Positions 12,001 to 59,298 of a stretch of 64,000 nt of DNA are shown here, one piece after another (the first letter of the stretch is position 1; every line of letters begins with the position of its first letter). Position numbers and translations under genes: made by a program. The stretch lies in the NCBI RefSeq assembly GCF_003918875.1, contig NW_025767046.1, forward strand, positions 3,410,001 through 3,474,000. Direction: 5' to 3'. The notes below the pieces were generated by a model. The model saw only the letters and a list, made by a program, of their open reading frames with translations. It had not been told where the DNA came from and did no database searches. This DNA comes from Haliotis rubra. Its lineage: Eukaryota.

Positions 12001-12407
12001 AAACACTCAAAGTTGGCATTTGAGATCATACGAGGTGTATGTTTTTTGGGGGTGTATGTACAAAAATGACGGCGTTTAGCGGCCATAATGTATTTTTGGG
12101 TTTTGCGATTTAACAGCCTCACGCTAAATGCAAGGAAACACGCTAGCTTTTATCAACGATCCTTTGGTCGACGTTGGGGCCAAACATCTTGTCTAGTGGG
12201 TCTTCTGTTGTGGGTATATGTTTTTCAAGACGCTTTTAGCAATATTCAAGCAATATCACGGCGGGGAACACCACGGATTGTACTCATGTGGGGACTCGAA
12301 CCCGGGTCTCTGGCGTAACGATCGAACGCTTTAACCACTAGGCTACCCCACCGCCCCGAGCGGAATGTGAACCATGTCCACCTACTGGCAGGCCCTCATT
12401 TATGAGA

Positions 12408-13289: not shown

Positions 13290-13680
13290 TAGGCTGCAAC
13301 GATTCGCCCAGACCTCGATTCGATTCGATTTTCGATATTGGACCCTCGATCCGATCATTTTCGATTCGATTCTTCATACAAGTGAAAACATCAGATTTCA
13401 TTATAATCGCAGTCGGCTTTTTCAGCGTGAACTCCATCGTCACATTGGCGATGTCTACTAACAAACAATTCTCATTGAATAATTAGCCCGGTGTCAACCA
13501 ATCATGTTTCGCCTTATTCCAGTGCTCGAAAGAGTCAACATTACGTTCTGGAAATAATTTAAATAGGTATTCAAATATCGAATCGAAATAGATAAATAGA
13601 AAAATGGCTATCGAAAATCGAAATCAAGGTATGTGATTCGATTTTCGATGAATCGAACCGAATCGTTGCCGCCATATTAG
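13290..13680. mobile_element. hAT-like MITE nested in a family A SINE
   Basis: Termini taggctgcaacgattc...gaatcgttgccgcc; subterminal (TCGAT)n/(ATCGA)n; splits a minus-strand SINE (13168-13705). Confidence 0.6.
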
Positions 13681-16600
13681 TCACTTGTGTACCCCACCGC
13701 CCCATATGAACTTGTAACAGGAAAGAACGGCAATCAAATTATATTGGAGCCAACATGGGCGGGAACATTCAAGATCCGGGTATAGTCGTTTCCGGTATAT
13801 ACCTGTTATATACGTAACAGGAGTGGGGGAAGGTGTTTTACGCCGCTTTTAGCAATATCACAAAAATGGGCCCATGTGTGGGACCGAAACTGGTCCCCCA
13901 CATGGGAACTTCAAGATTCGGGTATTCGTTTCCGGTAGAGAAGACCATTGCGAACAAGCACCGTATATCGGACGTCTCATAAAGGCAGGACAGTAACGAA
14001 GGTCTAAAGCCTAAGGATGGAGTTTAAACAACAAACAACCGCAAAGGCAAGAAGTCACTTCCAAAGCGCAAATATTGCAAATACACCACTGTCAACAACA
14101 AAACTAAGGGGCGTTGGGATAGCCTAGTGGTTAAACGTTCGCTCGTCACGCCGAGAACCCGGGTTCGATTCCCCACATAGGTACAATGTGAAACCCATTT
14201 CTGGTGTTCACCGGCGTGATATTGTGGCGGTCGGGACTCAAACTTCTAATAAACCTTTCAGGCTTGGGTTTAGGAAGAGTCAAAGACTTCTATTCAATGA
14301 ATAAATAGCTTTTTATTCATAGGTATAAATTTACTTCAGCACAATGCTCTATTTTAATAGACCCGTGAAGATCCGGGGTAGAATAGTGATTTTCAATAAC
14401 CCATGCTTGTCGTAAGAGGCGACTAACGGGATCGTGTGTCAGGCTCGCGGACTTGGTTGACACATGCCATCGGTTCCCAATTGCGTAGATCGATGCTCAT
14501 GGTGTTGATCACTGGATTGTCTGGTCCAGACTCGATTATTTACAGACCGCCGCCATATAGCTGGAATATTGCTGAGTGCGGCGTAAAACTAAACTCACTC
14601 TCTTTTAATAAGTAGATCCCTCTCAATGTGCATGGACCAGTGTTAGGCAAGGTGAGGTGAGGTGAGATTGGGTTTAACGTCGTGCTTGAGAATATTTCGC
14701 TCATATGACGACGTGCATGCGTGTGTATGTGTGTATGTCATGTATTACTTTATCATGGGTTCCTACATTGTCGGTACATTGTCATTGAATTTGATTCTCT
14801 CTTTGCTGAGTTGTCAGTTAATTGTAGCTGAAGTGTGAAGACGTTTTGCTCTCCCATTAATCCATTAAATGTTGAAAATGTATTTCTCATAATATTTTCA
14901 TTAGAAAATGAACCTCAAACAAATTTCAAGGCAATCAGAAGTTTTGACCTTGCCTAAAACTGCTGACATTGTGTCAAATAAATTTCAGAAAAGAGGAGGG
15001 TTCTGGGTAACTGCTGATCAGACTTATCAAAATGTTTCATATCAGTCGGAGAAATCATCAATATTAATATCATGTGCAAGGTTTCATGGTAATACTTTTT
15101 GTACTTTCTGATTAACAAGATATTGCATTTATTTCCTTCAGAAACTTCCATTTCATTTCCTTCAAATACTCAAGAGCTGTTTTCTCTTTGACATCATATG
15201 TGCACGTGGTACCTTGTATCATCATTGCCCCATTGATCCTTCAAATACGTATTACCAGCATGGAAAGGTTTATGACAATACATGTACATTGTATCTAACG
15301 AACTTTTTCTGGCCACAGAGTGTAAATTACAGAGAATAATAACATTATTCCTGGTTAATGGATCCAATCAAAGCTACACGTGAAGGCGTTTAAACGTTAG
15401 CAGTCCATCTCATCCCGCCGGGTACCCATTCACTGCTGGGTGAACAGGGGCAATTTTGTACAAAGTCACTTGCCCATGGTGAGACCACGTGTTACATGTG
15501 CTTGGTTGTGGGGCAGGACTGAAGTAATAGGTTTTTAATATGCTGTTAGTAACACTGTGCGGACAGTTGCAGGTTTTCGCGGCCAAAACAACATAGAATA
15601 TATATACTATAAAACAAATATAATATAATAAAACAAACAGAGCTCGACAGTCCTCCATACCATCCAGTATTCGTGTTATTAATGCAACGAATACTTTTGA
15701 ATAGTCATCTTGCATGCGATAACTACTAACTCAGCCGCTTTACCTATGTGGTTAATGGTATGGAATCATAAGCATTCATTTTGTGCATGTAATTATTGTG
15801 TATATTTTGTGGATTTTGTATATATTCATTTTGATGTTTTTGATACAAAAAGAATTTCTTCCGGGATAATAAAGTTATATCTTATCTTCTCTTACTAGCA
15901 TGTCCGAAATGTCTTCGATAAAATTTAAGTCCCTACTCACTGTGAAATATTGAAATCTGTTTAAGTCAACGTAACATTAATATATTAGCTATCCAGACAG
16001 TATTATTCCAACAACCTTGAAGCAGATCTGGGTGCCGTTCCACCAACCGATCTCATCTAAGATCAATCTTAGCAAGTTACGCCAATTATACAGTTTTTCT
16101 ATTCCTTTGTATCCCAGAATATGTACATCAGTGTTATACATTCATTTAATAAAACTAAGTCTAAAATAGACTAATGAAGCTAGAAATTAACCCCCAAAAA
16201 GTAAGCTAGTATGAAATGATAATGTCGTTTCCACGCATTTATTTCGACCTTTCTCTGTCGCACACCATGACATCGAAAGTAAAGGGCATATTTCAATGAT
16301 CTCACAGAATATCGGCCACGAGTTACCCCCGAGTATAGTAAAACTCCTCACAGTGGAACGAAACCGGCAATGTCCGGAGCTACAATATCAATGACTGTAG
16401 AGTAACTTCCCTTGTCCTTCGAGTATGACAAACGTAAACACGACGAACTATCATCTACGATTCCTGCCATACGGAAATTTATTTCGACTGGGATATGTGT
16501 AGCTTTAAAGACACTCGTACCGGGTCATACAAATACTACATGCATATCACCTAGACTTGATTTCGTAGGTTTTACGATCGTGGGACAACTTCTGAAGTGT

Positions 16601-18096: not shown

Positions 18097-19359
18097 ATGG
18101 AGAAAGGGATCCCAGTGCCAGACAGATTGTCTCAAGACTTTCATAAAGAGTTACTGGATAATGTTGATGAGTTCTATCACTTATACTCCATTCTCCACAT
18201 CGCAGGCAACAAGACTGATATACTTGAATACATTGCCAAAGAAGGCCCTGGGATGGTCTATAGATTCAACAGGCTGTGTTACTACAAGGAGTCCCATTTC
18301 ATTGAGGATATTCCAGACTATCCCCTCAGCTGGGCTGCAGCAGGAGGTGATGTGGACATCGTAAAGGCATTGATCAAAGCTGGGTTCAACCCTCATATCA
18401 CAAATAAGGAAGAAAACACACAAAAGGATTTCCGGATACCACTTGTGCGAGCAGTAGAAAAAGGTCACCTACCTATCGTGAGATTGCTTGTTGAAGAACA
18501 TGGTTGTGATGTTAACGTCAGTGATGGCTACTTCAAACGGACTGCCCTGCATAGAGCTGCTCAGAATGGTGATTTTACGATGGTTAAATACCTGGTTGAA
18601 CATGAAGCAGACGTGAATGCTGTGGACAGCGTCAATGGAGTGCCCTTGTATCACACGCTTGATGATCACAAAATGGTGAAGTATCTTATTGCCAATGGTG
18701 CCAAAGTTAAAACTTGGGGTCGGCATAACTTGCCTCTGCTATCCTATGCTGCAGATTGCTGTGATGATTTGGATGTCTTTCGGACACTTATAGAAGCAGG
18801 GGCGCACGTTAATCATGGTGGGCCACCCACGACACCTTTCAATAGCGCTGCCGAGCGTGGAAGGCTCGCTTTGATGAAGCTGTTGTATGAATATGGTGCT
18901 GATGCAGACCTACAGGACATGTATGGAATAACTGCACTGCATGTTGTTGGTAAACATACTGACACTGTCTGTGCACGGTACCTTATCATGGACTTAAATG
19001 TTTCTCTAGACAAAACGGATGGGTTTGATCGTACCCCTTTTTCAGTTGGAGTGAAATGTGAGCACCCTCAGTTTCTTCATCTCTTGATGGATGCAGGCTA
19101 CAGACCCACTGGCAAGGATAATGACTACATCCATCATAAGAGTCTAACCACAACAGATTTGTTGCTGCAGGCTGCATTGCATCGTGCACAGGCCATGACA
19201 ACTAGTCCGTGTTCACTTCAGGACAGATGTTGTTTCAAGATTCGAAGGATGGCAGGTAGGGATGTTCAATCCAAAGTGGAACAGTTGAATCTTCCGGTTG
19301 TCATGAAGGACATGATCAAACTGAACCATTTGAAAACTGATTTGATTGATGAAATTTGA
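18097..19359 (+). CDS. Ankyrin repeat and SOCS box-containing protein (ASB-like, 420 aa, CDS in one exon)
   Basis: 420-aa ORF with about 8 ankyrin repeats (PLSWAAAGGDVDIVKALI, PLVRAVEKGHLPIVRLLV, TALHRAAQNGDFTMVKYLVEHEADVN, TPFNSAAERGRLALMKLLYEYGAD) and a C-terminal SOCS box (PCSLQDRCCFKIRR...LNLPVVMKDMI). Acceptor ttagtttcAG at 18081-18090 lies 6 nt before the start context caacATGg. Confidence 0.93.
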   Translation: MEKGIPVPDRLSQDFHKELLDNVDEFYHLYSILHIAGNKTDILEYIAKEGPGMVYRFNRLCYYKESHFIEDIPDYPLSWAAAGGDVDIVKALIKAGFNPHITNKEENTQKDFRIPLVRAVEKGHLPIVRLLVEEHGCDVNVSDGYFKRTALHRAAQNGDFTMVKYLVEHEADVNAVDSVNGVPLYHTLDDHKMVKYLIANGAKVKTWGRHNLPLLSYAADCCDDLDVFRTLIEAGAHVNHGGPPTTPFNSAAERGRLALMKLLYEYGADADLQDMYGITALHVVGKHTDTVCARYLIMDLNVSLDKTDGFDRTPFSVGVKCEHPQFLHLLMDAGYRPTGKDNDYIHHKSLTTTDLLLQAALHRAQAMTTSPCSLQDRCCFKIRRMAGRDVQSKVEQLNLPVVMKDMIKLNHLKTDLIDEI

Positions 19360-27719: not shown

Positions 27720-30700
27720 TCAGTATTTTCGTATTCTTCTTATTCTTCTGGATTCCTTCTTCCTGTTTCTCTCACACTTTCTCTCCTTCTCTATCTCCAC
27801 TGACCTCTCACTATCTCTCCTACTGTAACTGTCCTGGCCATCTGTCCTCTGTTTCTTTCTGGCTGGACTTCTACTCCGGCCACAATCACTATCCCTTTCA
27901 CTATCTCTCCTACAGCCAGCTACCCTCGAATCCATCTTCTGTTCCTTAGAAACAGGGCTACTTTGTGTAATCAGACAGCTCTCACTATCCCTCCTGCTGG
28001 AGCTTGCTTGAGAGTCTGTCTTCTGTTTATGTGTGACAGGGCTTTTATGAGTACTGCCACCACTATTATATTCCTTGTCATCTAAATGTCCATCTTGTCT
28101 CATCAGGTTGTCTCTCACCTTGGTGATGATTTGTCCAAGCAGGTTTTGACCCTGCCATGTTCGCTCGTCCCAAGCCCGGGGGTCATTCTTGTGTAAGGCA
28201 ATTCCCCAAGTGGCATCGTAGGGACTGGCCTCCACCATCAGTCGAGGTGCTGTGGCAAACAGCTTTTTCTTTAGGTGGGGATTTTGGGAAAACTGGAAAC
28301 ATAATAGAAATATGTTACTTATGCTTGCCTGAAGAGTTCCTTTGTTTTGTCAGCACATTCTATTCCTTGAAGACTTGGTTTATTATATTTTTTTATTTCA
28401 AAGGAAATTAAAACAATCCTGGCTTCAAGAAGTGAGTGAGTATCGTTTTAGCAATATTCCAGCAATATCACAGCGGTGGACACCAGAAATGGCCTCCACA
28501 CATTGTACCATGGAGGGAATCAAACTCGGGTCTTTGGCTTGTCAAGCAAACACTTAAACCACTAGGCTACCCCACCTCCCCCTGGTTTCTAGACAAATAT
28601 ATGTTATATTCTATTTATCTTCTCTGAAACATTATCTGCTACCATGTGCTCAGTAGACTAAACATGGGTCATTTAGCCATGATAGTCAGTTTTATTCAAT
28701 TCATTCCTAAACACTGTGTTACATATCTTGTCAGTTTGTAAGTGTGTTAGTGTATATCCTACAACATCCTGTCCACATCACAGTTGCCTGTAGTAATCTA
28801 GTGTGCACTTCATTTGTGAGTGAGTGAGTGAGTGAGTGAGTATAGTTTTACGCTACTTTTAGCAATATTCCAGCTAGTGATGTTCCGATGATCGAAAATC
28901 GATCGAAAGAAGGATTAAAAGTGATTATCGATTGTAAAAAATACATTTTCTATTAATCAGAATTTTGTTGCTTTTGTATAACACCCTTGAATGAAGTAAA
29001 CTAACCATCAAATCTGAAAAATATTCACGAACAAACATGCGCTCAACAGCGTAAAGCTATGCACATTGTAAAATTTTAACCACTTTTACTGTTTACAATT
29101 CCAGTGTCTTTCTTGTGTGCATTTCATTGCATGACAGCATTAGTTAGAAAAAAACTGGGGAAAAACCCTTAAAATTGGTGATTACATTAAAAATGTATAT
29201 ATTTCGATTACAATCGATAATCGTTCACCACAATCCTCCAATAATCGATAGTGGATTTGGTTTCCGATTCCCAACGCTAATTCCAGCAATATCATGTTGG
29301 GGACACCTGAAATAGGATTCACACACTGTACCCATGTGGGAAATCGAACCCGGGTATTCAGCATGACGAGGGAATGCTTTAACCACTTGGCTACCCCACC
29401 TCCCCTTTGCTAGTTGTCAACCTACAATATATTATGTCGATGCAGTATTGTTATACATTTATGAATACTGTGATTGAATAATTAATTGCCCTGTAAGAGG
29501 CGACTAACAGGATCAAGTGGTCCGGCTTGCTGGCTTGGTTGACACATGTCATCGGTTCCCAATTGCACAGAACGATGCTCATGCTGTTGATCACTGGCTG
29601 TCTGGTCCAGACTCGGTTATTTACAGACGGCCGCCATATAGCTGGAATATTGCTAATTGTAAACCAAAAGCCACTGTGTTCTTTAATCTGATTGGTTGAA
29701 AAACATGATCAAATGGTATTAGATTCCCGGAAATTCGCTGCGTATTAATACATACAAACATCGCTCACACCATTGTATTGTTACGTCGTCAGCTGTGATG
29801 ACGTCATAAAATCATATTGTGACGTAAAGTCCAAATGACGTCACAAATGAGCAGTTCCAGATGCTACCATGGGAGACAGCCGAAATGGCCGTCTGATGAC
29901 ATTTCACTGCTGTACCCGTACTCGATGTCAATGAATGCAGACACAAAAACGTGTGTGGACCTTCTGGTTTACTTTTGTGTTTACAATGTCGATAAACATC
30001 ATGTGTTGGCTGACGCCGTCTGTTCCAAATGAATTCCCGTGCTTCAAATACTCAATAACACCCGGAAATTGGCCAACACATGATGTTTATCTCCTAAGTG
30101 CGACGTAAAACTAAACTCACTCACTCACTCACACATTAATTGCCACTATAATTTTATATTACAAGATCATCATAGTTAAAATGAACAAAAGGCCATCTGA
30201 TGTATCAGCCTAGGAACTTTTTCATGTATTCACACAAAGAATAACTAATCTTGTTACTAAGAGTAAATACATATATCAATAACTGAAGTTTCCAATCAAT
30301 AACATTCCTAATGCTAAGCTGATCATGAGTTAGTCAGTGGGTATGTTTTGCAAAACTTCTCACAATATTCAATACAATATCACAGGAGAGGGCACCAGCT
30401 TCACGCATTGCACCAATATGGGGAATCAAACATGGGCCTTCAGTGTGACGATTAAACACTTGAACCACTAGGCTACCCTTCCGCCTCAAGTGTATTTTGC
30501 TGCATCTACAGACTGACCTTTGCCATGTTGCCCTTCTCCACGACCTCCTTGCTGTGCTGCATCCATGTGTCAAAGTTGAAGTTCTGGATCTGCTTGCCCA
30601 GACGCTTCTGTTCCTTGGGATCCCGGGAATTCAGTATCTTCTCCTCAATATCCTTGTCTTCAAAAAGAGCTGGAAAATGGAAAGTATGACAACTGCATGT

Positions 30701-36053: not shown

Positions 36054-38761
36054 TCACGAATGATACACGGTATCTTTGTCGACTCGGACAACCATCCCTA
36101 TATATTTGTCTTCTTCATTAAGATATACTCGTCTGTCGGGCCTCTCTGTGTCATACCCACCCCTCTCACTATCCCCTCTGCTGTAATGTCCTCGATTATG
36201 TGTCTCTTGTTTTTCTGTGTCCATGTTTCTTGGTCGGTCCTGTCTGGGAAAAGGCTTGTTTTGGTTTTTTCGTTTCTTTTTCTTCTTTTTCTTCTTTTTC
36301 TTTTGCCTGCCTGTTCCCTCTTGTCCGCTGTTGTCACTGTCCCTTGTCTGTGACAACTGCCCAGGGTCATCTGGACACCCACTGCTGCTCGCCAATTGTC
36401 CGGAACCCCTTCCCTGACGTAAGTTCTGCCAGCTCACTCTTCTTCTGTCCATGTTGTCATTACTGGTACATTGGAACCCATCTGAACTATCCCCTGTAGA
36501 GCTGTAATCTGTCTTTTCCATACTTCCCCCTTCTTCGCCAACCAGAACTCCGTCTTGTCTCATCAGGTTGTCTCTCACCTTGGTGATGATTTGTCCAAGC
36601 AGGTTTTGACCCTGCCATGTCCGCTCGTCCCAAGCCCGGGGGTCATTCTTGTGTAAGGCAATTCCCCAAGTGGCATCGTAGGGACTGGCCTCCACCATCA
36701 GTCGAGGTGCTGTGGCAAACAGCTTTTCCTTCAGGTGGGGATTTTGGGAAAACTGGAAACATGATAGAAATATCTTACATGAACTGAAAAGTAAGAATAT
36801 CATATATATTGTTTGCTGTTTAGGGCCGCATTCGTCAGTTTCCCCGCTTTTACGACGGCGGTCAGTAAATATTCGAGTCTGAATTTAAACGAACGTCAAC
36901 ATTTGAAACTGCCCTACATTGCCACACAGTTAAAAGATATTGGTATGGAACACTACATCTCAAGAGTAGTCAGTTGGGCCGTGCCCATGCCCTCGAAATC
37001 CGAGTACAGGAACCAAGAACGGAAATTCAGTTACAGTGTTACAGTGACCGTGTTTGTTTGTTGTTTTACGCCGCACAGCAGTTCAGCAATTTACCAGCTA
37101 TATGACGGCGGTTAGCAGATAATCGAGTCTGGACCAGACAATCCAGTGACTGATATCATGGGTATCGATCTGCGCAACTGGGATACGATGGCCTGCAGCA
37201 ACCAGATCAGCGAGCCTGACCATCCGATCCTGTTACTCGCCTCTTATAGGCATGGGTTCCTGAAGTCCTGAAGTCCAGTAGTTTAGATTTCCACAGGTCT
37301 ATCACAGGTATCAGATTCCATATTGCAACAATTCTGGTTTGTAGGTGGACATGTAATTTTGTGATGATCTCCCAAATATTACCTGAATATGTAAGACATT
37401 GTCATCTACCGATGCTCTAGTGAGACAATTTAGAATCCAAACCTGGTGTAGTTTTTCCAAATATTGCTTGAATCAATCCATCAGATATTTATTCCTATGC
37501 TTTTGTCCTTCACGGTGGGAACAGAAGGTTGTTTTTTGTTGTAACCTTTCAATAATTCAGGAAGTTTTACGTCCTTGGGTCTTTTGATATTTTAAAACCA
37601 ATGACTAGATTTTTTTTGGAAAATAGAAATGCTGTGTCAGGTGACATTTTCACTGCATCTGTTCACGTGCAGTCAGCATTTCAGTCCTTAATGGATGGTA
37701 AGTGCATCATGAGTTAGTGAGTGAGTATGGTTTTACGTTGATTTTAGCAGTGTTCCGGCAATATCATGGCGGAGGACACCAGACATGGGCTTCACAAATT
37801 GTACCCATGTTGGGAATCGAACACGGGTCTTCAGCGTGACGAGCGGACACTTTAACCATGTGGCTACCCCACCGGCCCATGAGTTAGTGAGTGGGTATGG
37901 TTTTACAAGGCTGTTAGCAACATTCATTTCAATATCATTGAACCATGCACTTGGCTACCCTTCCACCTCAAGTGTATTTTGCCGCATCTACAGACTGACC
38001 TTTGCCATGTTGCCCTTCTCCACGACCTCCTTGCTGTGCTGCATCCACGTGTCAAAGTCGAAGTTCTGGATCTGCTTGCCCAGACGCTTCTGTTCCTTGG
38101 GATCCCAGGAATTCATTATCTTCTCCTGAATATTCTTGTCTTTAAAAAGAGCTGGAAAATGCAAATAAAAATGTCTTGAGTGAGTTAGGGATTTCACTGC
38201 TGGGGGCAGATTACAGACAATTTGGTTTGTTGAGGCAGAAAACGTTTCACGTGAATAAAAGAGGACGTTTTACAGATACGCACATCTAGTACATATCTGC
38301 CCATGTTGAAAATCTTCATGTGGTTTGAACCTTACAACAGACCACATAAATTAACATTATAACATGCAGTTAATTTATATTTCCCATAAAAGGAAAATAC
38401 TTTTAAGTGCCTGTATACAGTTTACGATTGGAAAATTCTACTTGAAACTGCATTTTAGTGTCGCAAATGTTTGTCAACATCAACCTGTCAACCCACCTGC
38501 CTTCCTGTACATGTAATACTGCTCTGCACAGTTGAATTCTTTGCCGTCAACTGTGAACTTGACTGGGTGGTGTTGACTGAAAGGTGACTGCCAGCCAAAG
38601 AACAGTTCATATTTCTGCGACGGTCTTCCAGGGAATCTATCACCGCGGTGAAAGTTGTGTCTGTTGGGTGATCCTGCTTGAAAGTAACTTTCACTTCTGC
38701 GTCGTTTGGATGGATCAACCTCGACATATTTACCGTCCCACTTCCGTTTGCGACTTGACAT
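36054..38761 (-). CDS. NADAR/YbiA-family N-glycosidase paralog 2 (3 exons, ~371 aa)
   Basis: Exons 38761-38497 (265 nt, donor GTGGGT), 38151-38000 (152 nt) and 36752-36054 splice in frame. Nearly identical to paralog 1 up to LMRQDG, then a different tail with a poly-Lys tract. Confidence 0.92.
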
Positions 38762-48524: not shown

Positions 48525-50430
48525 TTCCCTATTACATCTGGTTCACTCCCTCCACCATTCTATTACATCTGGTTCACTCCCTCCCCTATTCCATTACATC
48601 TGGTTCACCCCCTCCCATATTCCCCTATTCCATTACATCTGGTTCATTCCATCCCCTATTCTATTACATCTGGTTCACTCCCCCCCCTATTCTATTACAT
48701 CTGGTTCATTCCCTCCCCTATTCTATTACATCTGGTTCATTCCCTCCCCTATTCCATTACATCTGGTTCACTCCCTCCCTCATTCCATTACATCTGGTTC
48801 ACTTCCTCCCTATTCTATTACATCTGGTTCATTCCCTCCCCTATTCTATTACATCTGGTTCATTCCCTCCCTATTCCATTACATCTGGTTCACTCCCTCC
48901 CTCATTCCATTACATCTGGTTCACTCCCTCCCTCATTCTATTACATCTGGTTCACTCCCTTCCCTATTCTATTACATCTGGTTCACTCCCTCCCCTATCC
49001 CATTACATCTGGTTCACTCCCTACCCTATTACATCTGCTTCAGTCCCTACCCTATTCCATTACATCTGGTTCAGTCCCTACCCTATTCCATTACATCTGG
49101 TTCATTCCCTCTCCTATTCTATTACATCTGGTTCACTCCCTCCCCTATCCCATTACATCTGGTTCACTCCCTACCCTATTACATCTGCTTCAGTCCCTAC
49201 CCTATTCCATTACATCTGGTTCACTCCCTCCCCTATTCCATTACATCTGGTTCATTCCCTCTCCTATTCTATTACATCTGGTTCACTCCCTCCCCTATCC
49301 CATTACATCTGGTTCACTCCCTACCCTATTACATCTGCTTCAGTCCCTACCCTATTCCATTACATCTGGTTCACTCCCTCCCCAATTCCATTACATCTGG
49401 TTCATTCCCTCCCCTATTCCATTACATCTGGTTCACTCCCTCCCTCATTCCATTACATCTGGTTCACTCCCTCCCTCATTCTATTACATCTGGTTCACTC
49501 CCTCCCCAATTCTATTACATCTGGTTCACTCCCTCCCCTATCCCATTACATCTGGTTCACTCCCTACCCTATTACATCTGCTTCAGTCCCTACCCTATTC
49601 CATTACATCTGGTTCACTCCCTCCCTCATTCTATTACATCTGGTTCACTCCCTCCCCAATTCTATTACATCTGGTTCACTCCCTCCCCTATCCCATTACA
49701 TCTGGTTCACTCCCTACCCTATTACATCTGCTTCAGTCCCTACCCTATTCCATTACATCTGGTTCACTCCCTCCCCTATTCCATTACATCTGGTTCATTC
49801 CCTCTCCTATTCTATTACATCTGGTTCACTCCCTCCCTATTCTATTACATCTGGTTCATTCCCTCCCCTATTCCATTACATCTGGTTCACTCCCTCCCCT
49901 ATTCAATTACATCTGGTTCACTCCCTCCCTCATTCCATTACATCTGGTTCACTCCCTCCCTCATTCTATTACATCTGGTTCACTCCCTCCCCAATTCTAT
50001 TACATCTGGTTCATTCCCTCCCCTATTCCATTACATCTGGTTCACTCCCTCCCTCATTCCATTACATCTGGTTCACTCCCTCCCTCATTCTATTACATCT
50101 GGTTCACTCCCTCCCCAATTCTATTACATCTGGTTCACTCCCTCCCCTATCCCATTACATCTGGTTCACTCCCTACCCTATTACATCTGCTTCAGTCCCT
50201 ACCCTATTCCATTACATCTGGTTCAGTCCCTACCCTATTCCATTACATCTGGTTCACTCTCTCCCTATTCCATTACTTTCGTATATCCCCCCTCCCCCTA
50301 TTCCATTACATCCGGTTATTAAACCTCCACCGCCCCTCCCCTATTCCACTAAATCAGGTTCCTTTCCTCCCACTATTCTATTACATCCGGTTCCTTTCTA
50401 TTCTATTTCATCTGGTTCCTTTCCTCCTCC
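48525..50430. repeat. ~30-bp minisatellite (CCCTATTCCATTACATCTGGTTCACTCCCT)n with higher-order variants
   Basis: About 60 units directly visible; the degenerate terminal unit overlaps the NADAR4 stop codon. Confidence 0.95.
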
Positions 50431-53400
50431 ATCAGCGTGTCCCTCACATATGTCAATATGTATCCAAGCTGGTTCTTCCCTCTCCAGTTCTTCATGTCCC
50501 AGGCCAGAGGGTCCTCCCTGTCAAGCCCAATACCCCATACAAGGTCTGAGGGGCTCGCTTCAACCATCAGTTTAGGATGTGTTTTAAACAGCTTCTTTTT
50601 CAAATCCGGATTCTGGGAAAACTGAAAAATAAAATAAATGTGGATATATATTCTCAAGCTCATTTAATATATCAATTCGCCTGCATCCTCTTTCCTCTTT
50701 AGGCTCGTGGTTAAAGCGTTCGCTCGTCACGTCGCAGACCCGGGTTCAATTCTCCACTTAGGTACAATGTGTGAAGCCCATTTCTGTCCCCGGTCGTGAT
50801 ACTGCTGGAATATTGATAAAAGCGGCGGAAAACCATACAACTGTTTTTGTCATTGTTGGATCAGCATTCTAGAAGTTGCGGAATCAATAATGAAGCATAC
50901 AACTTTATAAATAACAATAATTTCCTGTTTATTGCAAGATTCTTCTGTAAAGCTTTTCATGTTGCCACTCTTAGTTTAATAACGGTGTAAGAATCTACCC
51001 CCGAAACGTCGGTCTGTGCAATAAACAAACGTTTATGTTATCCATAAAGTTCTACGCTTCATAGGGGCGGTAGGGTAGCCCAGTGGTTAAAGCGTTCGCT
51101 CGTCACGCCGAAGACCCGGGTTCGATTGCCCACATGGATACAATGTGTGAGGCCCAATTCCTGGTGTTCCCCGCCGTGATATTGCTGGAATATTGCTAAA
51201 AGCGGCGTAAAGCTAAACTCACTCACTCTATGTTTTATAATTGAACTGTTACAAGAATATATTAATTTCATATCCAACACACATATACCAGAACCATTAG
51301 AGTATTAACTCCCCGGATAATTTGTTCCGCCCAATGGCCCCACTTCGCGTGATATTTTTCTACCAATACGCTAAACGTCTAAGATCCCAACACCCTTAAA
51401 AACAACAGTTGTGTTCCAAGCGACGTTTAGCAACATTGGATCATTCACGCATTAATGAGGGGCGGTGGGGTAGCCTAGTGGCTAAAGCGGTCGCTCGTCA
51501 CGCCGAAGACCCGGTTTCGATTCCCCACATGGGTACAATGTGTGAAGTCCATTTCTGGTGTCCCCCGCCATGATATTACTGGAATATTGCTAAAAGCGGC
51601 GTAAAACTAAACTCACTCACCTTGGCCCGGTTTGCGCGTTCAACAACCCGCTGACAACACTCTTTCCACACTTTTATGTCAAAATTTTCGATCTTTCTTC
51701 CAAGTCGCTTGTGTTCTGCGGGATTATCCGTTGCCAATACTTTCGCCTCAATGTCTTTGTCATTGAATGTAACTGGAAATTTAGAGTGAAAATTGAAAAA
51801 GGAAAAAATAAAAATATATACATAGATATAATAATATTGATTATGTAAGATAAGCCTGTGGCATTTGTAGAGGGTATCTCAGATAAACACGAAAACATTT
51901 CATATGAAAACAGAAATGTTCTCTACTTTCGGTACTTTCATGCTAATCAAATAATGATGTTGGAAAATACATCCATGCTGAAGTACCACAATGATTGAAT
52001 GGGAGTTCCCTCTCACTAAATCACCCGGCCCCACTCACTCACTCAATCCACTTCCACCAGCAAGCTCGCGCTCTTACACGAACATGATCGGAAACATCCA
52101 CTTACCCATTCACTCACCCACTAAATCACAACCCACTCCACTCCACCACATCCCATCACACTCCGCTCCTCTCCTCTGTATGTATGTATGCATGCATGTG
52201 TGTATGTTTGAATGTATGTATGTATGTATGTATGTATGTTTGTATGTATGTTGTTTGTATGCATGCATGTGTGTATGTTTGTATGTATGTTTGTATGTAT
52301 GTATGTATGTATGTATGTATGTGTGTATGTTCGTATTTATGTATGTATGTATGTTTGTATTTATTTATGTTTGTATGTATGTATGCATGCATGTGTGTAT
52401 GTTTGTATGCATGTTTGTATGTATGTTCGTATTTATNNNNNNNNNNNNNNNNNNNNNNNNNNNNNNNNNNNNNNNNNNNNNNNNNNNNNNNNNNNNNNNN
52501 NNNNNNNNNNNNNNNNNNNNNNNNNNNNNNNNNNNNNNNNNNNNNNNNNNNNNNNNNNNNNNNNNNNNNNNNNNNNNNNNNNNNNNNNNNNNNNNNNNNN
52601 NNNNNNNNNNNNNNNNNNNNNNNNNNNNNNNNNNNNNNNNNNNNNNNNNNNNNNNNNNNNNNNNNNNNNNNNNNNNNNNNNNNNNNNNNNNNNNNNNNNN
52701 NNNNNNNNNNNNNNNNNNNNNNNNNTATGCATGCATGTGTGTATGTTTGCATGCTTGTATGTATGAATTCCACTCCGCTCCACTCCACTCCAGCGCTGAC
52801 TCAGTGATTAGAGCGTCCGCCCGGAGAGCGGAAGGTCGCGGGTTCGATCCCCGGCTCGTACTCACTGAGATATATATCTTATTCAACTTAAAGTGCCAAA
52901 AATCGCTACAATTATCTCGAAATGTCAAACCTGAACAAGCATGAATGACCACTTGACACATTATATCCGTGTAAGGGGAATCGAAGGCGAGACAACAGAA
53001 GTATGTAACTATTTATGACACGCTGAGGCTCATCCCTCGATACGTAAAAGAAGTGTTCTAGGAAGTGTTATGGTTGTATTTTATGCAGACAGGCAATGTC
53101 TGATCAAATAATGATGTTGGAAAATACATCCATGCTGAAGTACCACAATGATTGATGGGAGTTCCCTCTTACTAAAATCACCAGGCCCCACTCACTTACT
53201 CAATCCACTTCCACCAGCAAGCTCGCGCTCTTACACGAACATGATCGGAAACATCCACTTACTCATTCACACACCCACTACATCACAACCCACTCCGCTC
53301 AACCACATCCCATCACTCCGCTCCGCTCCGCACCACTCCACTCCGCTCCTCTCCACCACATCCCGCTCCACGTCTTACCTACCTTACGATCTGGTTCCCA

Positions 53401-56400
53401 GTACGTACCAATCACCCGAACAATGACATGACCGTTCATTGTAAAGCCGGTCCAGTGATGTGGAAAGTCCCTGCCTGGCGCTCGGCATTAATGGGTACAA
53501 TGACTGGTCTGCGCGCGCGCGTGTAATGTGTTTGCTCGGAGTATCAGTATAATGTGTTATGTTTGCTAGGGGGCGTATAACCGGTTTCATGCAGTTCAGA
53601 CATCACTGCGGCATTCAGAAAACTTCGTAACGCTCGGAAATCTGTTTCAGTGCCAAATATTATTTTACATTTATACTCATAAACCCAGTTAATCGAGCAT
53701 AGTGATTTTGTTCCGTTTTGCATTATAAATAGTAACTCATTAAGTAGTCTTTTGGTTAAAATACTACTTGCAATATTTTGCAATACATACGCATGCACGT
53801 CGTCATATGAGCGAAATATTCTCAAGCACGACGNNNNNNNNNNNNNNNNNNNNNNNNNNNNNNNNNNNNNNNNNNNNNNNNNNNNNNNNNNNNNNNNNNN
53901 NNNNNNNNNNNNNNNNNNNNNNNNNNNNNNNNNNNNNNNNNNNNNNNNNNNNNNNNNNNNNNNNNNNNNNNNNNNTTCTGATACATCATGTACTGTTCAC
54001 CACAGTTGAATGTCACACCATCAATCTTGAAATAGGCTTCGTGATGGTGACTGAATGGAGACTTGAAACCGTAGAATAAAAACAATTCGTCTTTTCCGGA
54101 TGATCCTATATATCGTTTGTCTCTATACGTGGGGTTAAACTGGGCGCCGTTTGTTGACGCGTTGCCGCATGTTTCTGTAGGTGTAATCTCCCTTGTCAAC
54201 CTTGGACCCATTGGTTCATTTTCTCTGTTTCCCAGCTGACGTCTTGAATCGCTGTCTCGTCTTCCCATTGGTTCATTTTCCCGTTTCTTATTATCCTGAT
54301 CCTGTTTTTCGTTCAACCACTTTCGCTTAGGGCGTACATCGCCATTCTTCGCTTCCTCTGCTCTGACGCCCCCTTCCGTCTGTCTCTCTGCCACCACTTC
54401 TCCCTCTTCCGCTATACGAGCCATCTTCTTTTTCTTCTTCTTCTTTTTCTTCTTGTTCTCGGAGTCCGCTGTTGCTTCTGCCTCTTTCTCAATTGCCACG
54501 TGTACCTTCGCTTTCGCTTGATGTTTCCGCGGCTGTGCCATCAGTTTATCCCGGACACGAGTCAAGGCATACCCCAAAAGATTTCTTCCTTTCCATGTAC
54601 TCTTGTCCCAAGCTCTGACATCGTCGCTCGCTAGTCCAATACCCCACTTCTTATTACCCGGGGTGGCCTCAACCAAAAGTTGAGGGTGTGTGGCAAACAG
54701 GGATTCATGAAGCTTGGGATTCTGATCGAACTGTAAGAAAAACAACAACTAAAACACAAACCATTTTTAGAATAACCTTAAGTCAAGATGGTCGTGTCAG
54801 CATTAAATATTTCAGAACCTATGACGAAAACGAAATGATGTTTATTTATTAATCTTCAATAAATAAACATCACTTTCCAGATTTGGGGCGTTATTTGATA
54901 TTTGATGACGGACGTTTTTGATGGAGTTTTGGAGTCTGTCCACTCATTCTGCAGGATGTCAGATATGTGGTTTTTTTCAGTATTATAAACTCTCAAAATA
55001 AAATAACTGTCTTGTTCGTGAACAAACAATATATATCATGTACATGTCCTATCATTAAGCCATAATTTGTAAAGAAACCCTTAAAGCCCATACGGTGCCA
55101 ACGCTTTGCTCAGCATCTGTGGTAAGGAATATATATACCTATTCTCATGAATATGCTGTGATTATTGAAAACAAATTTAAGACTCTCCGCTGTTTCCCTA
55201 CGTTTCCTATCTTCCTCCTGCCACGAATGTTCTCTCCGACGTGAAATGATAAAAACCTATTTATCTCAATTTTCCCCGCCTCTGTAGACTTTGATGTATG
55301 TCATGATGTGATATAAAATACTCTATTCCTCCGTACGCATATAAAACCAGGACAGCTTGAATCTCTCTTCATCTATACTTGTATTAAATATTCCAGAAGC
55401 ATAGCGAACCCATCGTAACAGGCCATAGACTATACTCGGGATTAAAGTGGCCTAGGCAAGAATATACCCTGGGTATATTATGGCCTAGGCCAATTTATAC
55501 TCCGGGGTATAAATCGGCCTATACCAATTCATACCTCACAGGACAGATTGTACCCCCAGTATAGCCCAGCTGATATATGCCTGGGTTAAGTTGCCTAGGC
55601 TAGATTACACCCGGGTATATTATGGTCTAGACCAATTCATACCTCACAGGACAGATTGTACCCCCAGTATAGCCCAGCTGAGATATGCCTGGGTTAAGTT
55701 GCCTAGGCTAGATTACACCCGGGTATATTATGGCCTAGACCAAGTTATACCTCACAGGACAGATTGTACGCCTGGGTTAAGTTGCCTAGGCTAGATTACA
55801 CCCGGGTATATTATGGCCTAGACCAAGTTATACTCCAGGTTTAAATTGGCCTATCCAATTCATACCCCAACTCCCACCAGGTCAGCAGATTATACCCCCA
55901 AGACATCAGAGGTGTTTGATTATAAGACTGACTTTTATTACTTCAACCAGGAAAACCACAATCAGTAAAAACAAAAGATCAAAATCACTTTTACACCTGT
56001 CAGTATTGTTCACACATTAAAATAAACTATATTCCCCAAACAACGAAACACAATTGTGAAAAAACCCGCTCAATTAACCTTTCTGTTCATAAAGTGATAG
56101 CATGTATAATGTGCTGAAACTGAATAATGTCCTCACTGCTGTATGTGTAAATGTACCAAGTTAAACACTGATAACATCAAAATGATCATGGTTGTTGATA
56201 TACTGTGTAAATACAGTCAAAGCCTTGTTACAGAAGAGGGGTATATTCTGGCCTGGAGGGGCATAGTCTAGCCAAGGATGTTTTACACACCGGGTATAGT
56301 GTGGCCTATAGGACAGTTTATTCCCCGGGGTATACTCTAACTATACCCGGATTTAATGCGGGCAGGGGCTAATCTGGCCTGTTACACCGGATCTCTTGGT

Positions 56401-58461
56401 GGTTGAGCAGGAGGTGAGAAACACATGAAAAATACGGATGATAATAATAATAATAATAATGTATTTATAAAGCGCCTTATATCCACCATAGAGATGCTCA
56501 GTGGCATGTCGAAGATTGTGCATCATTTTGTTTGGTTTGTAAATAATCGAGTCTGGGCCAGACAATCTCGTCACACCACAAGCAATCTACGCAATTTTGA
56601 CATGCAGCAATTAAGTCGGCGAGCTTGACCACTCCAGTTTTTCGCCTATTACGACCATCCTGGGTTGCTGATGACCAATTCTAACCCGGATCTTCACGTG
56701 TATGTGAGTGAGTGGGTTAGTTTCGTTTTACGCCGCACTCAGCAATATTCCAGCTATATGGAGGCTGTCTGTAAATAATCGAGTCTGGACCAGACAATCC
56801 AGTGATCAACAGCATGACCTTCGATCAACGCAATTGGGAACCGATGACATCGGTCAACCACGTCAGCGAGCCTGACCACCCGATCCAGTTAGTCGCCTCT
56901 TACGACAAGCATGGGTTACTGAAGACCAATTCTAACCCGGACCTTCACGTGTATGTAGTGCATCACCCTACCTTGGCTTCGATGGCGCGTTCAAGAACTG
57001 TTTCCATGCTGTTCTGCCAAGCCTCCTGGTTGAAATTTTGAATACCTTTCCCACTGTCTTTCAGTTTCTCGTGGTCACTGACGGACAGAATCTTTTTAGC
57101 ACTTGCGTCGTCATTGGATAGAACTGAAATTGGGAAAATACGGTGTTTGTTGTTTTAAATAACGAGGCAATATTCAGCTCTGGGACGAGTCCGTGATTGA
57201 GTCGGATCTTTTGAAAGCATGAATCGTATATACAGAGGAACTGGAATTTTGAAAATGTGCTGTTTGTTTGTTGCATGACATAACCTTCAGCAATATTCCA
57301 CCTTTATTATGTAAATTATAGTCCGTAAATAATCGTGTCTCTTCAGCACATGCTTCAGATGTAACTGAAAATCTGAAAACCAGACGTCTGTTGCTTAAGA
57401 TCACACTAAGCAATATTGCAGCTTTATGACAACAGTCTGAGACTTGGCATGAGAATCCAGTGACTGACATCATGAACATCGAACTATGCAACCGGGGTAC
57501 GATGATATGTATCAACCAAGCGAGTCGAGCTGAGCACCCGATCCTGTTAGTCGCCTCTTACGACAAGCTTGGTGTTTCTGTAATCTGCCTCACAGTCCGT
57601 GAACCACATTATTTTACTAAAGCCCCAAATGAAGCAAGTCTAGATTTCCTCATGTTCTGATTTTCCATTCAAACTGGGATTCGTTTTCAATTCAAACTGG
57701 TTTATTTGTTACTATCAAAATTATATATATATATTCAGACTCAAAGCGTTAGTCTAGTGTTGCTGAAGACGGTTTCTAAGATTGCAATATGCCAACCGAA
57801 TCTAATACCCCGATCTATAACGATATTCATAATTATTGAAGGGAGATCTTATATTTTTATTGATTGGAAGATGAGGCTTAGTGACTTAATATGTATAAAG
57901 AGACAACTCTGTTTATGCATAAATCATATTGCACTCTATATCTCGTTATTCTACAAATACTAAGCAATAGACCTTGTGCTGAAACTGCTACTACTACCAC
58001 GACGATTACATCCAATACTACTACATATTTTAATCTAGTTAAACCCCAAACGCGACTACTACTACTACATATTTTCATCTAGCTGACCCCAAACCCCTTA
58101 CTACTACTACTACTACTACGTATTTTAATCTAGCTGACCCCAAACCCCTTACTACTACTACTACTACTACGTATTTTAATCTAGCTGACCCCAAACCCCT
58201 TACTACTTCTACTACTACTACTACTATTGCGTATTTTCATCTAGCTGACCCCAAACCCCTTACTACTACTACGTATTTTTATCTAGCTGACCCCAAACCC
58301 CTTACTACTACTACTACTACTACGTATTTTAATCTAGCTGACCCCAAACCCCTTACTACTACTACTACTACAACGTATTTTAATCTAGCTGACCCCAAAC
58401 CCCTTACTACTACTACTACTACTACTACTACGTATTTTAATCTAGCTGACCCCAAACCCCT

Positions 58462-58500
<39 letters not shown>

Positions 58501-58688
58501 GTATTTTAATCTAGCTGACCCCAAACCCCTTACTACTACAACTACGTATTTTAATCTAGCTGACCCCAAACCCCCTATTACTACTACCACTACGTATTTT
58601 CATCTCGCTGACCCCAAACCCCCTATTACTACTGCTACTACTACTACTACTACGTATTTTCATCTACCTGACCTCAAACCCCCTATAG

Positions 58689-58737
<49 letters not shown>

Positions 58738-59298
58738 CACTACCACTACATATTGTAATCTAGTTAACCCCCAAACCCCTACCTAATACACACTCACACC
58801 TTGGCACTGATGCATATCAATTATAGCCAGGGTAGGCTGTGACATGTATCTGTACAGTTACAGAAGCCGTTCAAGGTACACGCCACATGATGTGACACGT
58901 TAGCAATATAAATAGACGACTTGACACGACGAGCAATGCACACCGCAAACAATACAGTTTTTGTTTCGCGTTCAGTTAAGGCTTTCGATTTCAAAACTAG
59001 TAATGACATGAATCTACACTTGCATATTTTACAAACCAGGTCGTGAATTATATCTTTATGTCATAGCACACACGCAGTGTTATTGTACGTGTGTCTCCCT
59101 GGCGGTTGTTCTGTCGCTTCCAGCAAAGTATAACTTTGTGTATACTGATCACATCGTTAACTCACCAGCCTGTTGGTAGGTAATGTAGTGTTCGGCGGAG
59201 ATGAACAGGTTGCCATCTATTTCGAAATCCGCCTTATATTGAAGGCTAAATGTTGAATCGTTGCCCAAGAAGAAGTGAAAATCGTGTTGATCCTCCAT
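50403..59298 (-). CDS. Tandem two-domain NADAR-NADAR protein, paralog 4 (5 exons, ~471 aa)
   Basis: Exons: 59298-59166 (133 nt, MEDQHDFHFFLGNDSTFSLQY...SAEHYITYQQA; too short for the ORF track); 57123-56972 (152 nt); 54730 to ~53971 (end of domain 1, Lys-rich linker, start of domain 2; donor lost in the N gap); 51772-51621 (152 nt); 50621-50403. All visible junctions are GT-AG and in frame. Confidence 0.85.
51459..51620 (+). mobile_element. SINE family A copy abutting the NADAR4 exon 4 splice donor
   Basis: Full-length copy whose ACTCACTCAC tail ends at 51620, directly next to the exon end at 51621. Confidence 0.9.
52178..52765. repeat. (TATG)n microsatellite spanning an assembly gap
   Basis: Direct inspection; N run 52437-52725. 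Confidence 0.95.
55410..56390. mobile_element. Non-autonomous TIR element with internal ~115-bp tandem repeats
   Basis: Termini gtaacaggcc (55415) / ggcctgttac (56376); repeated gcctgggttaagttgcctaggctagattacacccgggtatattatgg units at 55520-55830. Confidence 0.6.
58060..58790. repeat. Compound minisatellite: constant ~30-bp block plus variable (CTA)n
   Basis: cgtattttaatctagctgaccccaaacccctta recurs about 13 times, separated by CTA tracts of varying length. Confidence 0.92.

What the first reader, a model, noticed from the sequence alone, without database searches (positions are those of the whole stretch)
50403..59298. NADAR-NADAR fusion with a degenerate (pseudoenzyme-like) first domain and an intact second domain
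Seen: domain 1 differs from the other four domains at motif positions: YQQA instead of Y(Q/R)KA, EATPGNKKWG instead of E(A/C)SPxDxxWG (Asp to Asn), KDSGK instead of KRLG(R/K), TFSLQY instead of PFS(Q/H)H. Its reading frame, exon sizes and splice sites are nonetheless preserved. Domain 2 keeps all motifs. The middle exon fuses an exon-3-type segment and an exon-1-type segment with no intron between them, implying fusion of two adjacent tandem copies. Inference: domain 1 is a catalytically dead or re-specified reader/decoy coupled to an active eraser.
Basis: partly seen in the sequence, partly recalled or inferred. Interest (0 to 1): 0.8.

Follow-up and report, generated by a model that had tools for sequence, protein, structure and literature searches.

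The report
Abalone double-NADAR gene, odd first domain
This abalone gene is a real, expressed fusion of two neighbouring copies of an ADP-ribose-removing enzyme (NADAR); its first copy has lost a phosphate-binding lysine that stand-alone NADARs keep but is still conserved, and similar altered copies turn out to be common in multi-NADAR proteins.

Summary
The window is Haliotis rubra. The minus strand at 50403-59298 holds a 5-exon gene identical to RefSeq LOC124285849 isoform X1 (471 aa) at all 468 readable residues.

**Gap and transcript.** The fused middle exon runs 5 nt into the gap at 53834-53975. Spliced RNA contigs join exons 2, 3, 4 and probably 5 in one record, leaving 4 unplaced letters at the gap, so the CDS is 1416 nt and in frame. 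Gap-free orthologues in H. cracherodii and H. rufescens have the same five exons.

**Domain 2.** It is a canonical NADAR.

**Domain 1.**
- It passes Pfam NADAR (124 bits) and folds as NADAR (pLDDT 95; TM 0.81 to 8BAU).
- It keeps both active-site glutamates.
- It replaces the experimentally essential diphosphate lysine (K to Q in all three species) and the Asp of the SPxD loop (N, N, S).
- Its dN/dS is 0.34 (95% CI 0.20-0.51), against 0.17 for domain 2. It is constrained, not decaying.

"Catalytically dead" and "reader/decoy" remain untested, and losing the phosphate contact argues against an ADP-ribose reader.

**Wider context.** Multi-NADAR proteins with degenerate domains are widespread. 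There is a second fusion in this same array, plus examples in Patella, a clam, a nematode and protists. This is a new variant of a known kind, of moderate interest.

The parts
59166..59298 (-). Exon 1 (133 nt): start codon and N-terminal third of NADAR domain 1. Holds E36 (59191-59193) and Q43 (59170-59172), which replaces the diphosphate-binding Lys. The donor is G|GTGAGT, phase 1.
   Evidence: identical to RefSeq protein P0054
56972..57123 (-). Exon 2 (152 nt): middle third of domain 1. Holds K70 (57047-57049, the Arg79 equivalent) and W80.
   Evidence: PF08719, 22.7 bits for this exon alone; spliced directly to exon 3 in RNA contigs
53976..54730 (-). Fused exon 3 (755 nt read, plus 5 nt inside the gap). 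It carries the C-terminal third of domain 1 (E116 at 54668-54670, N121 at 54653-54655, W124), the linker (residues 164-306, 54098-54526, with a Lys run at 54425-54457) and the N-terminal third of domain 2 (E340 at 53996-53998). The first two bases of the Lys347 codon are 53977-53976.
   Evidence: 69 bits; laid whole and without gaps in RNA contig X4 record 15
53834..53975 (.). Assembly gap. It hides the last 5 nt of exon 3, the exon-3 donor and the start of intron 3. I did not fill it.
   Evidence: bridged by RNA contigs with 4 unplaced letters; gap-free orthologues have a G|GTGAGT donor right after YQKA
52437..52725 (.). Assembly gap inside a (TGTA)n microsatellite in intron 3; non-coding.
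51621..51772 (-). Exon 4 (152 nt): middle third of domain 2 (R374, W384). Its donor abuts a tRNA-derived SINE at 51459-51625.
   Evidence: 39.7 bits; contig pieces end at 51621
50403..50621 (-). Exon 5 (219 nt including the stop): C-terminal third of domain 2 (E420, D425, W428).
   Evidence: (70.5 bits)

Best explanation
This is a Haliotis-lineage two-domain NADAR protein. It arose when the last exon of one member of a tandem NADAR array became joined in frame to the first exon of the next member.

Domain 2 has every ADP-ribose-contacting residue of the solved oomycete NADAR. I infer that it removes ADP-ribose from guanine/cytosine bases of nucleic acids, as shown for bacterial, oomycete and sponge NADARs.

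The linker is about 143 residues, disordered, Lys-rich (a Lys run and a PKRKW motif) and variably spliced. I infer that it tethers the two domains and gives nuclear or nucleic-acid affinity.

Domain 1 is a well-folded NADAR. It kept both glutamates but rebuilt its first helix (EQYMMxxKA became EHYITYQQA) and lost the diphosphate-binding Lys and the loop Asp. These changes arose before the H. rubra / North-Pacific split and have been kept since. I infer that it can no longer hold ADP-ribose in the canonical way and does not turn over the standard substrate efficiently. It would then serve as a non-canonical accessory module for domain 2, in targeting, regulation or another ligand.

Shown: gene structure, transcript, fold, residue states, selection. 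Inferred: all biochemical activities and the role of domain 1.
For: Gene and transcript:
- The model matches RefSeq isoform X1 at 468 of 468 readable residues.
- One RNA contig spans exons 2, 3 and 4, and its remaining 202 letters fit exon 5.
- The same five exons occur in H. cracherodii and H. rufescens without gaps.

Family and fold:
- PF08719 scores 124 bits for D1 and 162 bits for D2.
- The D1 model has pLDDT 95 and TM 0.81 to 8BAU.
- In the full-length model the linker has pLDDT below 50 and pTM is 0.41, so no confident domain packing.

Residues, mapped through the 8BAU alignment and PMC11543638:
- D2 has E, K, R, W, E, D, W.
- D1 has E, Q, K, W, E, N, W.
- D1 departs at 14 of 49 columns that are at least 85% conserved in 47 NADARs, D2 at 6. 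D1 departs at five columns that are invariant in those 47, and its residues there are the same in H. rubra and H. cracherodii.
- EHYITYQQAV is invariant in all three species.

Selection (NG86):
- D1 0.34 (CI 0.20-0.51) and 0.36; D2 0.17 and 0.19; linker about 0.7.
- The D1 stem branch is 0.61 against 0.17 for D2, followed by slower change.

Lysine requirement:
- K95 mutants lose activity or toxin rescue, and Lys94 is essential for diphosphate binding.
- All 18 non-Lys cases among 186 NADAR domain instances lie in multi-NADAR proteins; none of 117 single-domain representatives lacks it.
Against: - No biochemical data exist for any mollusc NADAR.
- D1 keeps the catalytic Glu, so residual or altered catalysis is possible.
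- D1's dN/dS is twice that of D2. In the close pair cracherodii/rufescens it is 0.55 with a CI reaching 1.44, so recent relaxation cannot be excluded.
- The Asp-equivalent site varies (N/N/S) and the Arg79 equivalent is K in H. rubra but R in the other two.
- There is no evidence that D1 and D2 touch (pTM 0.41; the complex job was not folded).
- The RNA contigs differ from the window by about 3%, so they come from another haplotype or a very close taxon.
Confidence: 0.55

Rival explanations
1. Domain 1 is still an active hydrolase whose pocket has been re-specified. It could act on a ribosylated substrate that lacks the canonical diphosphate contact, or on another base or linkage. The protein would then be a bifunctional eraser.
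For: - Both glutamates and both Trp residues are retained.
- The rebuilt helix EHYITYQQAV is the most conserved block of D1 across three species, as expected for a working site.
- A long stem branch followed by constraint fits neofunctionalisation.
- NADAR subfamilies are known to differ in base specificity (PMC11125620, PMC12945103).
Against: - The lost Lys is essential in every NADAR tested and is never lost in 117 single-domain representatives.
- The loop position varies N/N/S, which is unusual for a tuned catalytic site.
Confidence: 0.25
2. Domain 1 is a functionless passenger. It was trapped in frame ahead of the useful domain 2, so selection only keeps it foldable and free of stops while its active site decays.
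For: - dN/dS of D1 is twice that of D2. In cracherodii versus rufescens it is 0.55 with a CI reaching 1.44.
- Degenerate domains are common in multi-NADAR proteins, and 12 of 26 multi-domain representatives have no intact domain at all, which suggests frequent decay.
- No domain-domain packing is predicted.
Against: - dN/dS of 0.34-0.36 over dS of about 0.55 excludes neutrality (0 of 1000 bootstraps reach 1).
- The altered motif residues are identical across species.
- The model is very confident, which does not fit erosion.
- A useless N-terminal domain could be dropped simply by using a downstream start, yet three species keep it.
Confidence: 0.13
3. This is an artefact: two separate neighbouring genes, or a misassembly across the gaps, wrongly read as one gene.
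For: Two assembly gaps lie inside the locus, and the exon-3 donor is unread.
Against: - Single RNA contigs cross exons 2-3-4 colinearly.
- Two other species have the same fused exon in gap-free assemblies.
- The open frame is continuous through the linker.
Confidence: 0.02

Closest known systems
YbiA-type NADAR hydrolases (PF08719): Phytophthora nicotianae NADAR (PDB 8BAU), E. coli YbiA (2B3W), Streptomyces SCO5665, sponge NADAR
   Same: Both domains have the same fold and family. Domain 2 has all the ADP-ribose contacts: E43, K50, R79, W89, E125, D130, W133.
   Different: Those are single-domain enzymes. Here two domains sit in one chain, and domain 1 has Gln for K50 and Asn for D130. No activity has been measured for any mollusc member.
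Other multi-NADAR proteins in databases (all uncharacterised): H. rufescens LOC124129589 (4240 aa, 7 domains) and LOC124138828, H. rubra LOC124291567, Patella vulgata LOC126817334, Mercenaria, Branchiostoma, Aphelenchoides, Tritrichomonas, dinoflagellates
   Same: They have tandem NADAR domains in one polypeptide, often mixing intact and degenerate domains. A second fused-exon gene lies just upstream in the same array.
   Different: The degenerate types differ. The neighbours have K50 replaced by Met plus loss of R79, or loss of both Glu. The Gln/Asn type with both Glu kept occurs only in this gene's orthologues. Here the degenerate domain comes first; in the neighbouring gene it comes second.
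Enzyme plus degenerate-paralogue tandems: PARP14 macrodomains (eraser plus binders), JAK and GCN2 pseudokinase-kinase pairs, receptor tyrosine phosphatase D1-D2
   Same: An active domain is fused to a conserved paralogous domain with altered catalytic or binding residues. This analogy is from general knowledge, plus PMC10211241 and PMC12867742 as listed.
   Different: It is a different fold. No regulatory or binding role has been shown here, and no inter-domain contact is predicted.
DarT1-NADAR toxin-antitoxin modules
   Same: The NADAR fold and the presumed chemistry (guanine de-ADP-ribosylation).
   Different: Those are bacterial operon partners that use Asp in place of the Glu125-type residue plus a specific Lys115. 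This is a spliced animal gene in a paralogue array, and I did not look for a DarT.

Membership tests
NADAR (Pfam PF08719), domain 2 | Profile match above the gathering score (35.1 bits) | tested here: met
   161.8 bits, E 2e-47
NADAR (Pfam PF08719), domain 1 | Profile match above the gathering score (35.1 bits) | tested here: met
   124.2 bits in H. rubra; 125.6 and 128.6 bits in the orthologues
NADAR, domain 1 | NADAR fold | tested here: met
   AF2 pLDDT 95. Foldseek TM 0.81 to 8BAU and 0.78 to 2B3W; no other hit with E below 0.5
Catalytically competent YbiA-type NADAR | Catalytic Glu (E125 of 8BAU, E167 of SCO5665) and ribose-binding Glu (E43) | tested here: met
   D1 has E116 and E36; D2 has E420 and E340
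Catalytically competent YbiA-type NADAR | Diphosphate-binding Lys (K50 of 8BAU, K95 of E. coli C7, K94 of SCO5665) | tested here: not met
   D1 has Gln43 in all three species. D2 has Lys347 in the RefSeq proteins and orthologues, but the window shows only the first two bases of that codon because of the gap.
Catalytically competent YbiA-type NADAR | Asp of the SPxD loop (D130) and Arg79 | tested here: not met
   D1 has N, N, S at D130 and K, R, R at R79 in rubra, cracherodii and rufescens. D2 has D and R.
Catalytically competent YbiA-type NADAR | Hydrolysis of base-linked ADP-ribose | not testable with these tools
   Needs recombinant protein and ADP-ribosylated oligonucleotides.
Pseudoenzyme (a conserved paralogue lacking a residue required for catalysis) | Loss of an experimentally essential residue together with purifying selection | tested here: met
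   K to Q at the essential Lys. dN/dS 0.34, CI 0.20-0.51.
Pseudoenzyme | Demonstrated lack of activity | not testable with these tools
ADP-ribose reader module | Retention of the ligand-binding contacts without catalysis | tested here: inconclusive
   Five of the seven mapped contacts are kept (four identical, plus Arg79 as Lys in H. rubra). The only direct phosphate-binding Lys is lost. Binding was not measured.

The most novel reading that the evidence does not exclude
Domain 1 is the first non-catalytic NADAR-fold binding module. It would be a pseudo-NADAR that recognises modified or damaged nucleic acid, or a different ribosylated ligand, and steers or gates the tethered active eraser. Degenerate domains in multi-NADAR proteins of molluscs, nematodes and protists would then form a general, undescribed class of such modules.
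Probability: 0.2. Interest if true: 0.75.

Novelty: new variant of a known kind. Interest (0 to 1): 0.5.

Why it matters
NADARs are the most recently recognised family of ADP-ribose erasers, and their role in animals is unknown (PMC11125620).

This gene is a clean natural experiment. An intact and an altered NADAR sit in one chain, are expressed, and have been kept in three abalone species.

The survey also shows that NADAR domains lacking the essential lysine or glutamates occur almost only inside multi-NADAR proteins: 42 of 61 domains there, against 5 of 117 stand-alone proteins. That points to an undescribed class of pseudo-NADAR domains and gives concrete constructs for asking what a NADAR fold does when it cannot bind the diphosphate.

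It does not by itself reveal a new mechanism, and the locus is already annotated in RefSeq as 'uncharacterized'.

Tried and rejected
- **Complex prediction of D1 against D2.** It was not folded because my alignments held microbial rows. The job was counted and gave no information either way.
- **Word-based homologue search with D1 alone.** It returned only two canonical single-domain NADARs, so it said nothing about D1-like relatives. The exhaustive search replaced it.
- **Linker origin.** I tested whether the linker is visibly made of a paralogue's C-terminal tail plus the next copy's N-terminal leader. The best match was KRKW.. to the leader of copy A at E 0.16, and the Lys runs and RRDS motifs are low-complexity. 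This is suggestive only and not used as evidence.
- **Differences in the RNA contigs as a fourth sequence for dN/dS.** The tool lists only part of them, so I computed no rate.
- **cracherodii versus rufescens dN/dS.** There are too few changes, and the CIs are too wide to use.
- **Literature.** I found no paper on abalone or mollusc NADAR genes, tandem NADAR domains or pseudo-NADARs in the held library.
- **Common origin of D1 and the neighbouring degenerate type.** Both have His for the conserved Gln and have lost the Lys. The tree joins them only weakly (53/83), so this is left open.
- **Pseudogene reading of D1.** Rejected by its intact frame, its expression and a dN/dS below 1.
Full report
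**What is there**

The window is Haliotis rubra (G000:C2156:3410001-3474000). On the minus strand a five-exon gene spans 59298-50403:

| Exon | Coordinates | Length |
|---|---|---|
| 1 | 59298-59166 | 133 nt |
| 2 | 57123-56972 | 152 nt |
| 3 | 54730-53976, running into the gap | 755 nt read |
| 4 | 51772-51621 | 152 nt |
| 5 | 50621-50403 | 219 nt including the stop |

Every acceptor is AG, and the three readable donors are GT. The intron after YQQA is phase 1 and the introns after ..AK are phase 0.

Three single-domain NADAR genes further down the same strand share this exon plan. Their exon sets start at 33011/30664/28295, 38605/38146/36755 and 45610/44524/43853.

Exon 3 is one open frame. 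It holds the last third of one NADAR domain, about 143 linker residues and the first third of a second NADAR domain.

My conceptual protein equals RefSeq XP_046578079.1 (LOC124285849 isoform X1, 471 aa, P0054) at all 468 residues that can be read. Only residues 347-349, which cross the gap, are undetermined.

**The gaps**

Gap 52437-52725 lies in a (TGTA)n tract in intron 3.

Gap 53834-53975 starts right after ...TAT CAG AA. By homology with exon 1, five more exon bases and the donor should lie inside it.

I did not fill it. I tested continuity in two ways.

- **RNA contigs of public runs.**
  - X4 record 15 (1228 nt) lies on 51621-51773, then has 4 unplaced letters, then lies on 53976-54730 without gaps, then on 56972-57085.
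  - Its first 202 letters fall beyond the stretch I laid, where exon 5 is.
  - X1 records 1 and 3 show the same joints. Record 3 carries a further 167 letters upstream of exon 2, as expected for exon 1.
  - X1 and X4 have zero depth across the introns, while X9 and X10 cover them. X1 and X4 therefore behave as cDNA.
  - The base at 51773 matches by coincidence the phase-1 G. Exon 3 is thus 755+5 = 760 nt and the CDS 1416 nt (471 codons plus stop), in frame.
- **Orthologues in gap-free assemblies.**
  - H. cracherodii: P0002, 460 aa; L001 exons 10001-10139, 12135-12286, 13075-13804, 14632-14783, 15110-15319.
  - H. rufescens: P0057, 471 aa; L011.
  - Both have the same five exons, with a G|GTGAGT donor right after YQKA.

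The two-genes or misassembly reading is therefore rejected.

The RNA contigs differ from the window at about 3% of positions, so they come from another haplotype or a very close taxon.

**The two domains**

Both pass Pfam NADAR: D1 124 bits, D2 162 bits, cut-off 35.1.

An AlphaFold model of D1, built on a 51-sequence alignment, has pLDDT 95. It matches only NADAR structures: TM 0.81 to 8BAU and 0.78 to YbiA 2B3W.

The full-length model has two confident domains. The linker (164-306) has pLDDT below 50, and pTM is 0.41, so no confident packing of the domains is predicted.

**Active-site mapping**

Schuller et al. 2023 (PMC11543638) list the ADP-ribose contacts of the Phytophthora NADAR as E43, K50, R79, W89, R93, E125, D130 (water-mediated) and W133. 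Counting along the HMMER alignment to 8bau_A with an offset of 2 reproduces all eight residue identities.

| 8BAU residue | D2 | D1 |
|---|---|---|
| E43 | E340 | E36 |
| K50 | K347 (codon split by the gap) | Q43 |
| R79 | R374 | K70 |
| W89 | W384 | W80 |
| E125 | E420 | E116 |
| D130 | D425 | N121 |
| W133 | W428 | W124 |

R93 is not conserved in mollusc NADARs at all.

Mutagenesis shows the following:
- The Lys is essential. K95 of E. coli C7 NADAR was tested, and K95R works in vitro but does not rescue cells. Lys94 of SCO5665 is needed for diphosphate binding.
- The E125-type Glu is the catalytic residue. SCO5665 E167D and E167Q are dead.

D1 has therefore not lost its catalytic Glu. It has lost the phosphate anchor.

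Against 47 other NADARs, D1 departs at 14 of 49 columns that are at least 85% conserved, and D2 at 6. Five of D1's departures are at columns invariant in all 47: Q to H, M to I, M to T, K to Q and D to N. At all five, H. cracherodii carries the same replacement.

Across three species the rebuilt helix EHYITYQQAV is invariant. The loop position reads N, N, S, and the Arg79 equivalent reads K, R, R.

**Selection and history**

Nei-Gojobori dN/dS:

| Comparison | D1 | Linker | D2 | dS |
|---|---|---|---|---|
| rubra vs cracherodii | 0.34 (bootstrap CI 0.20-0.51; 0/1000 reach 1) | 0.68-0.75 | 0.17 (0.09-0.29) | about 0.55 |
| rubra vs rufescens | 0.36 | 0.71 | 0.19 | about 0.6 (D1, D2) |
| cracherodii vs rufescens | 0.55 (0.25-1.44) | 1.16 | 0.40 | 0.03-0.08 |

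The third comparison is underpowered.

In a tree of array domains and other lophotrochozoan NADARs, the Haliotis array copies form a clade (93/96). D1 of the two species pairs at 100/99 on a long stem (0.61, against 0.17 for D2), followed by slower change.

D1 thus changed fast after duplication, before the split of H. rubra from the North-Pacific species. It has been constrained since, about twice as loosely as D2.

**Context that changes the picture**

The array continues upstream of the window.

- A second fused-exon gene lies at C2156:3479246-3483008. Its fused exon is an open frame, with AG at every acceptor and GT at the donors I read.
- There the intact domain comes first. The degenerate one comes second: YQMA, loss of the LGR motif and a 4-residue insertion in the WG loop.
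- H. cracherodii has three domains at that place. H. rufescens RefSeq models chain up to seven (P0058).
- These degenerate domains also show dN/dS of 0.37-0.48, against 0.13-0.25 for canonical neighbours.

An exhaustive HMMER search with D1 found 9886 proteins at E of 1e-3 or better. Among the best 150 cluster representatives, 26 other proteins carry two or more NADAR domains. They come from Patella, Mercenaria, Branchiostoma, Aphelenchoides, Tritrichomonas, dinoflagellates and metagenomic eukaryotes.

Scoring four positions (E43, K50, E125, D130):
- Intact in 112 of 117 single-domain representatives.
- Intact in only 19 of 61 domains inside multi-domain proteins (Fisher 2e-20; the instances are not independent).
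- All 18 non-Lys cases lie in multi-domain proteins.

The Gln type occurs only in this gene's isoforms and orthologues, plus two unrelated instances.

The architecture of a NADAR plus an altered NADAR is therefore recurrent and, as far as I could search, undescribed. This gene is one well-documented example, not a singular oddity.

**Mechanism**

Shown: one expressed gene, two folded NADAR domains, a disordered basic linker, the residue states and purifying selection on D1.

Inferred:
- D2 removes ADP-ribose from G/C bases, by analogy with the oomycete, bacterial and sponge enzymes.
- The Lys run and PKRKW in the linker are conserved in all three species. RefSeq isoforms X2 and X3 trim other parts of the linker. 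These motifs could give nuclear or nucleic-acid affinity.
- D1 cannot hold the diphosphate canonically, so it is a poor hydrolase for the standard substrate and acts as an accessory module.

I rate this reading at 0.55. The rivals are a re-specified active enzyme (0.25), a constrained but functionless passenger (0.13) and an artefact (0.02).

**Verdict**

The locus is already annotated as 'uncharacterized'. What is new is the reading of D1 and the broader link between degenerate NADAR domains and multi-domain proteins. I class it as a new variant of a known kind, with interest 0.5.

Noticed in passing
Upstream of the window: G000:C2156:3479246-3483008 (L002:5246-9008), minus strand: A second fused-exon NADAR-NADAR gene. 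Its first domain is intact (EASPSD, but YQKT for YQKA). Its second is degenerate (YQMA, EDYSY for KRLGR, ECNHED and a 4-residue insertion before the WG). The fused exon is an open frame of 204 aa with good splice sites. H. cracherodii has three domains at the matching place (L001:581-5873), and H. rufescens RefSeq chains seven (P0058, 4240 aa).
   Followed up: partly
L002-L007 (C2156:3474001-3528375): Further NADAR copies. One type has lost both glutamates (E43 to L, E125 to Y; window-extended 76613/74638 and 110941/109065). One copy has an in-frame stop in exon 2 (81864-82016). There is a segmental duplication of three copies at about 101-118 kb.
   Followed up: partly
L009:4704-5486 (G000:C1502:1172704-1173486), and more than 150 other places: More than 150 intronless full-length NADAR ORFs are scattered over the genome. 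The one I examined is a CARD+NADAR ORF lying just after protein-primed DNA polymerase B ORFs, that is, in a Maverick/Polinton-like element. Another (L008:4828-5808) has an unassigned 170-aa N-terminus. I observed these only.
   Followed up: partly
window 51459-51625: A tRNA-derived SINE abuts the exon-4 donor. Its antisense tail reads GTGAGTGAGT. RNA contigs end exon 4 exactly at 51621, so this donor is used. The orthologues have gtgagaatga there, so the first five intron bases may be ancestral.
   Followed up: partly
window 48531-50317: A 31-bp minisatellite (58 copies, 87% matches, strong C over G skew) starts about 85 bp downstream of the stop codon. It may lie in the 3'UTR.
   Followed up: no
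window 58055-58780: A compound minisatellite (51-bp unit containing (ACT)n runs) in intron 1.
   Followed up: no
window 18097-19359 (+): An intronless 420-aa ORF with ankyrin repeats and a C-terminal SOCS box (Pfam E 2e-36 and 4e-8).
   Followed up: no
window 27720-28295 and 36054-36755 (-): The last exons of single-domain copies A and B run on for about 125-165 residues after the NADAR domain. These tails are basic and Ser/Arg-rich (a Lys run in B, RRDSE repeats in A) and resemble the fusion gene's linker in composition.
   Followed up: partly
window 51621-57124 (exons 2-4): The RNA contigs (runs X1, X4) differ from the window at about 3% of exon positions. Many of the listed differences are non-synonymous in D1, the linker and D2. 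This indicates another haplotype or a closely related taxon under the same organism label.
   Followed up: partly
window 54098-54526 (linker): RefSeq isoforms X2 (452 aa) and X3 (445 aa) differ from X1 only by in-frame deletions of 19 and 26 residues inside the linker. The RNA contigs I laid show the undeleted form.
   Followed up: partly
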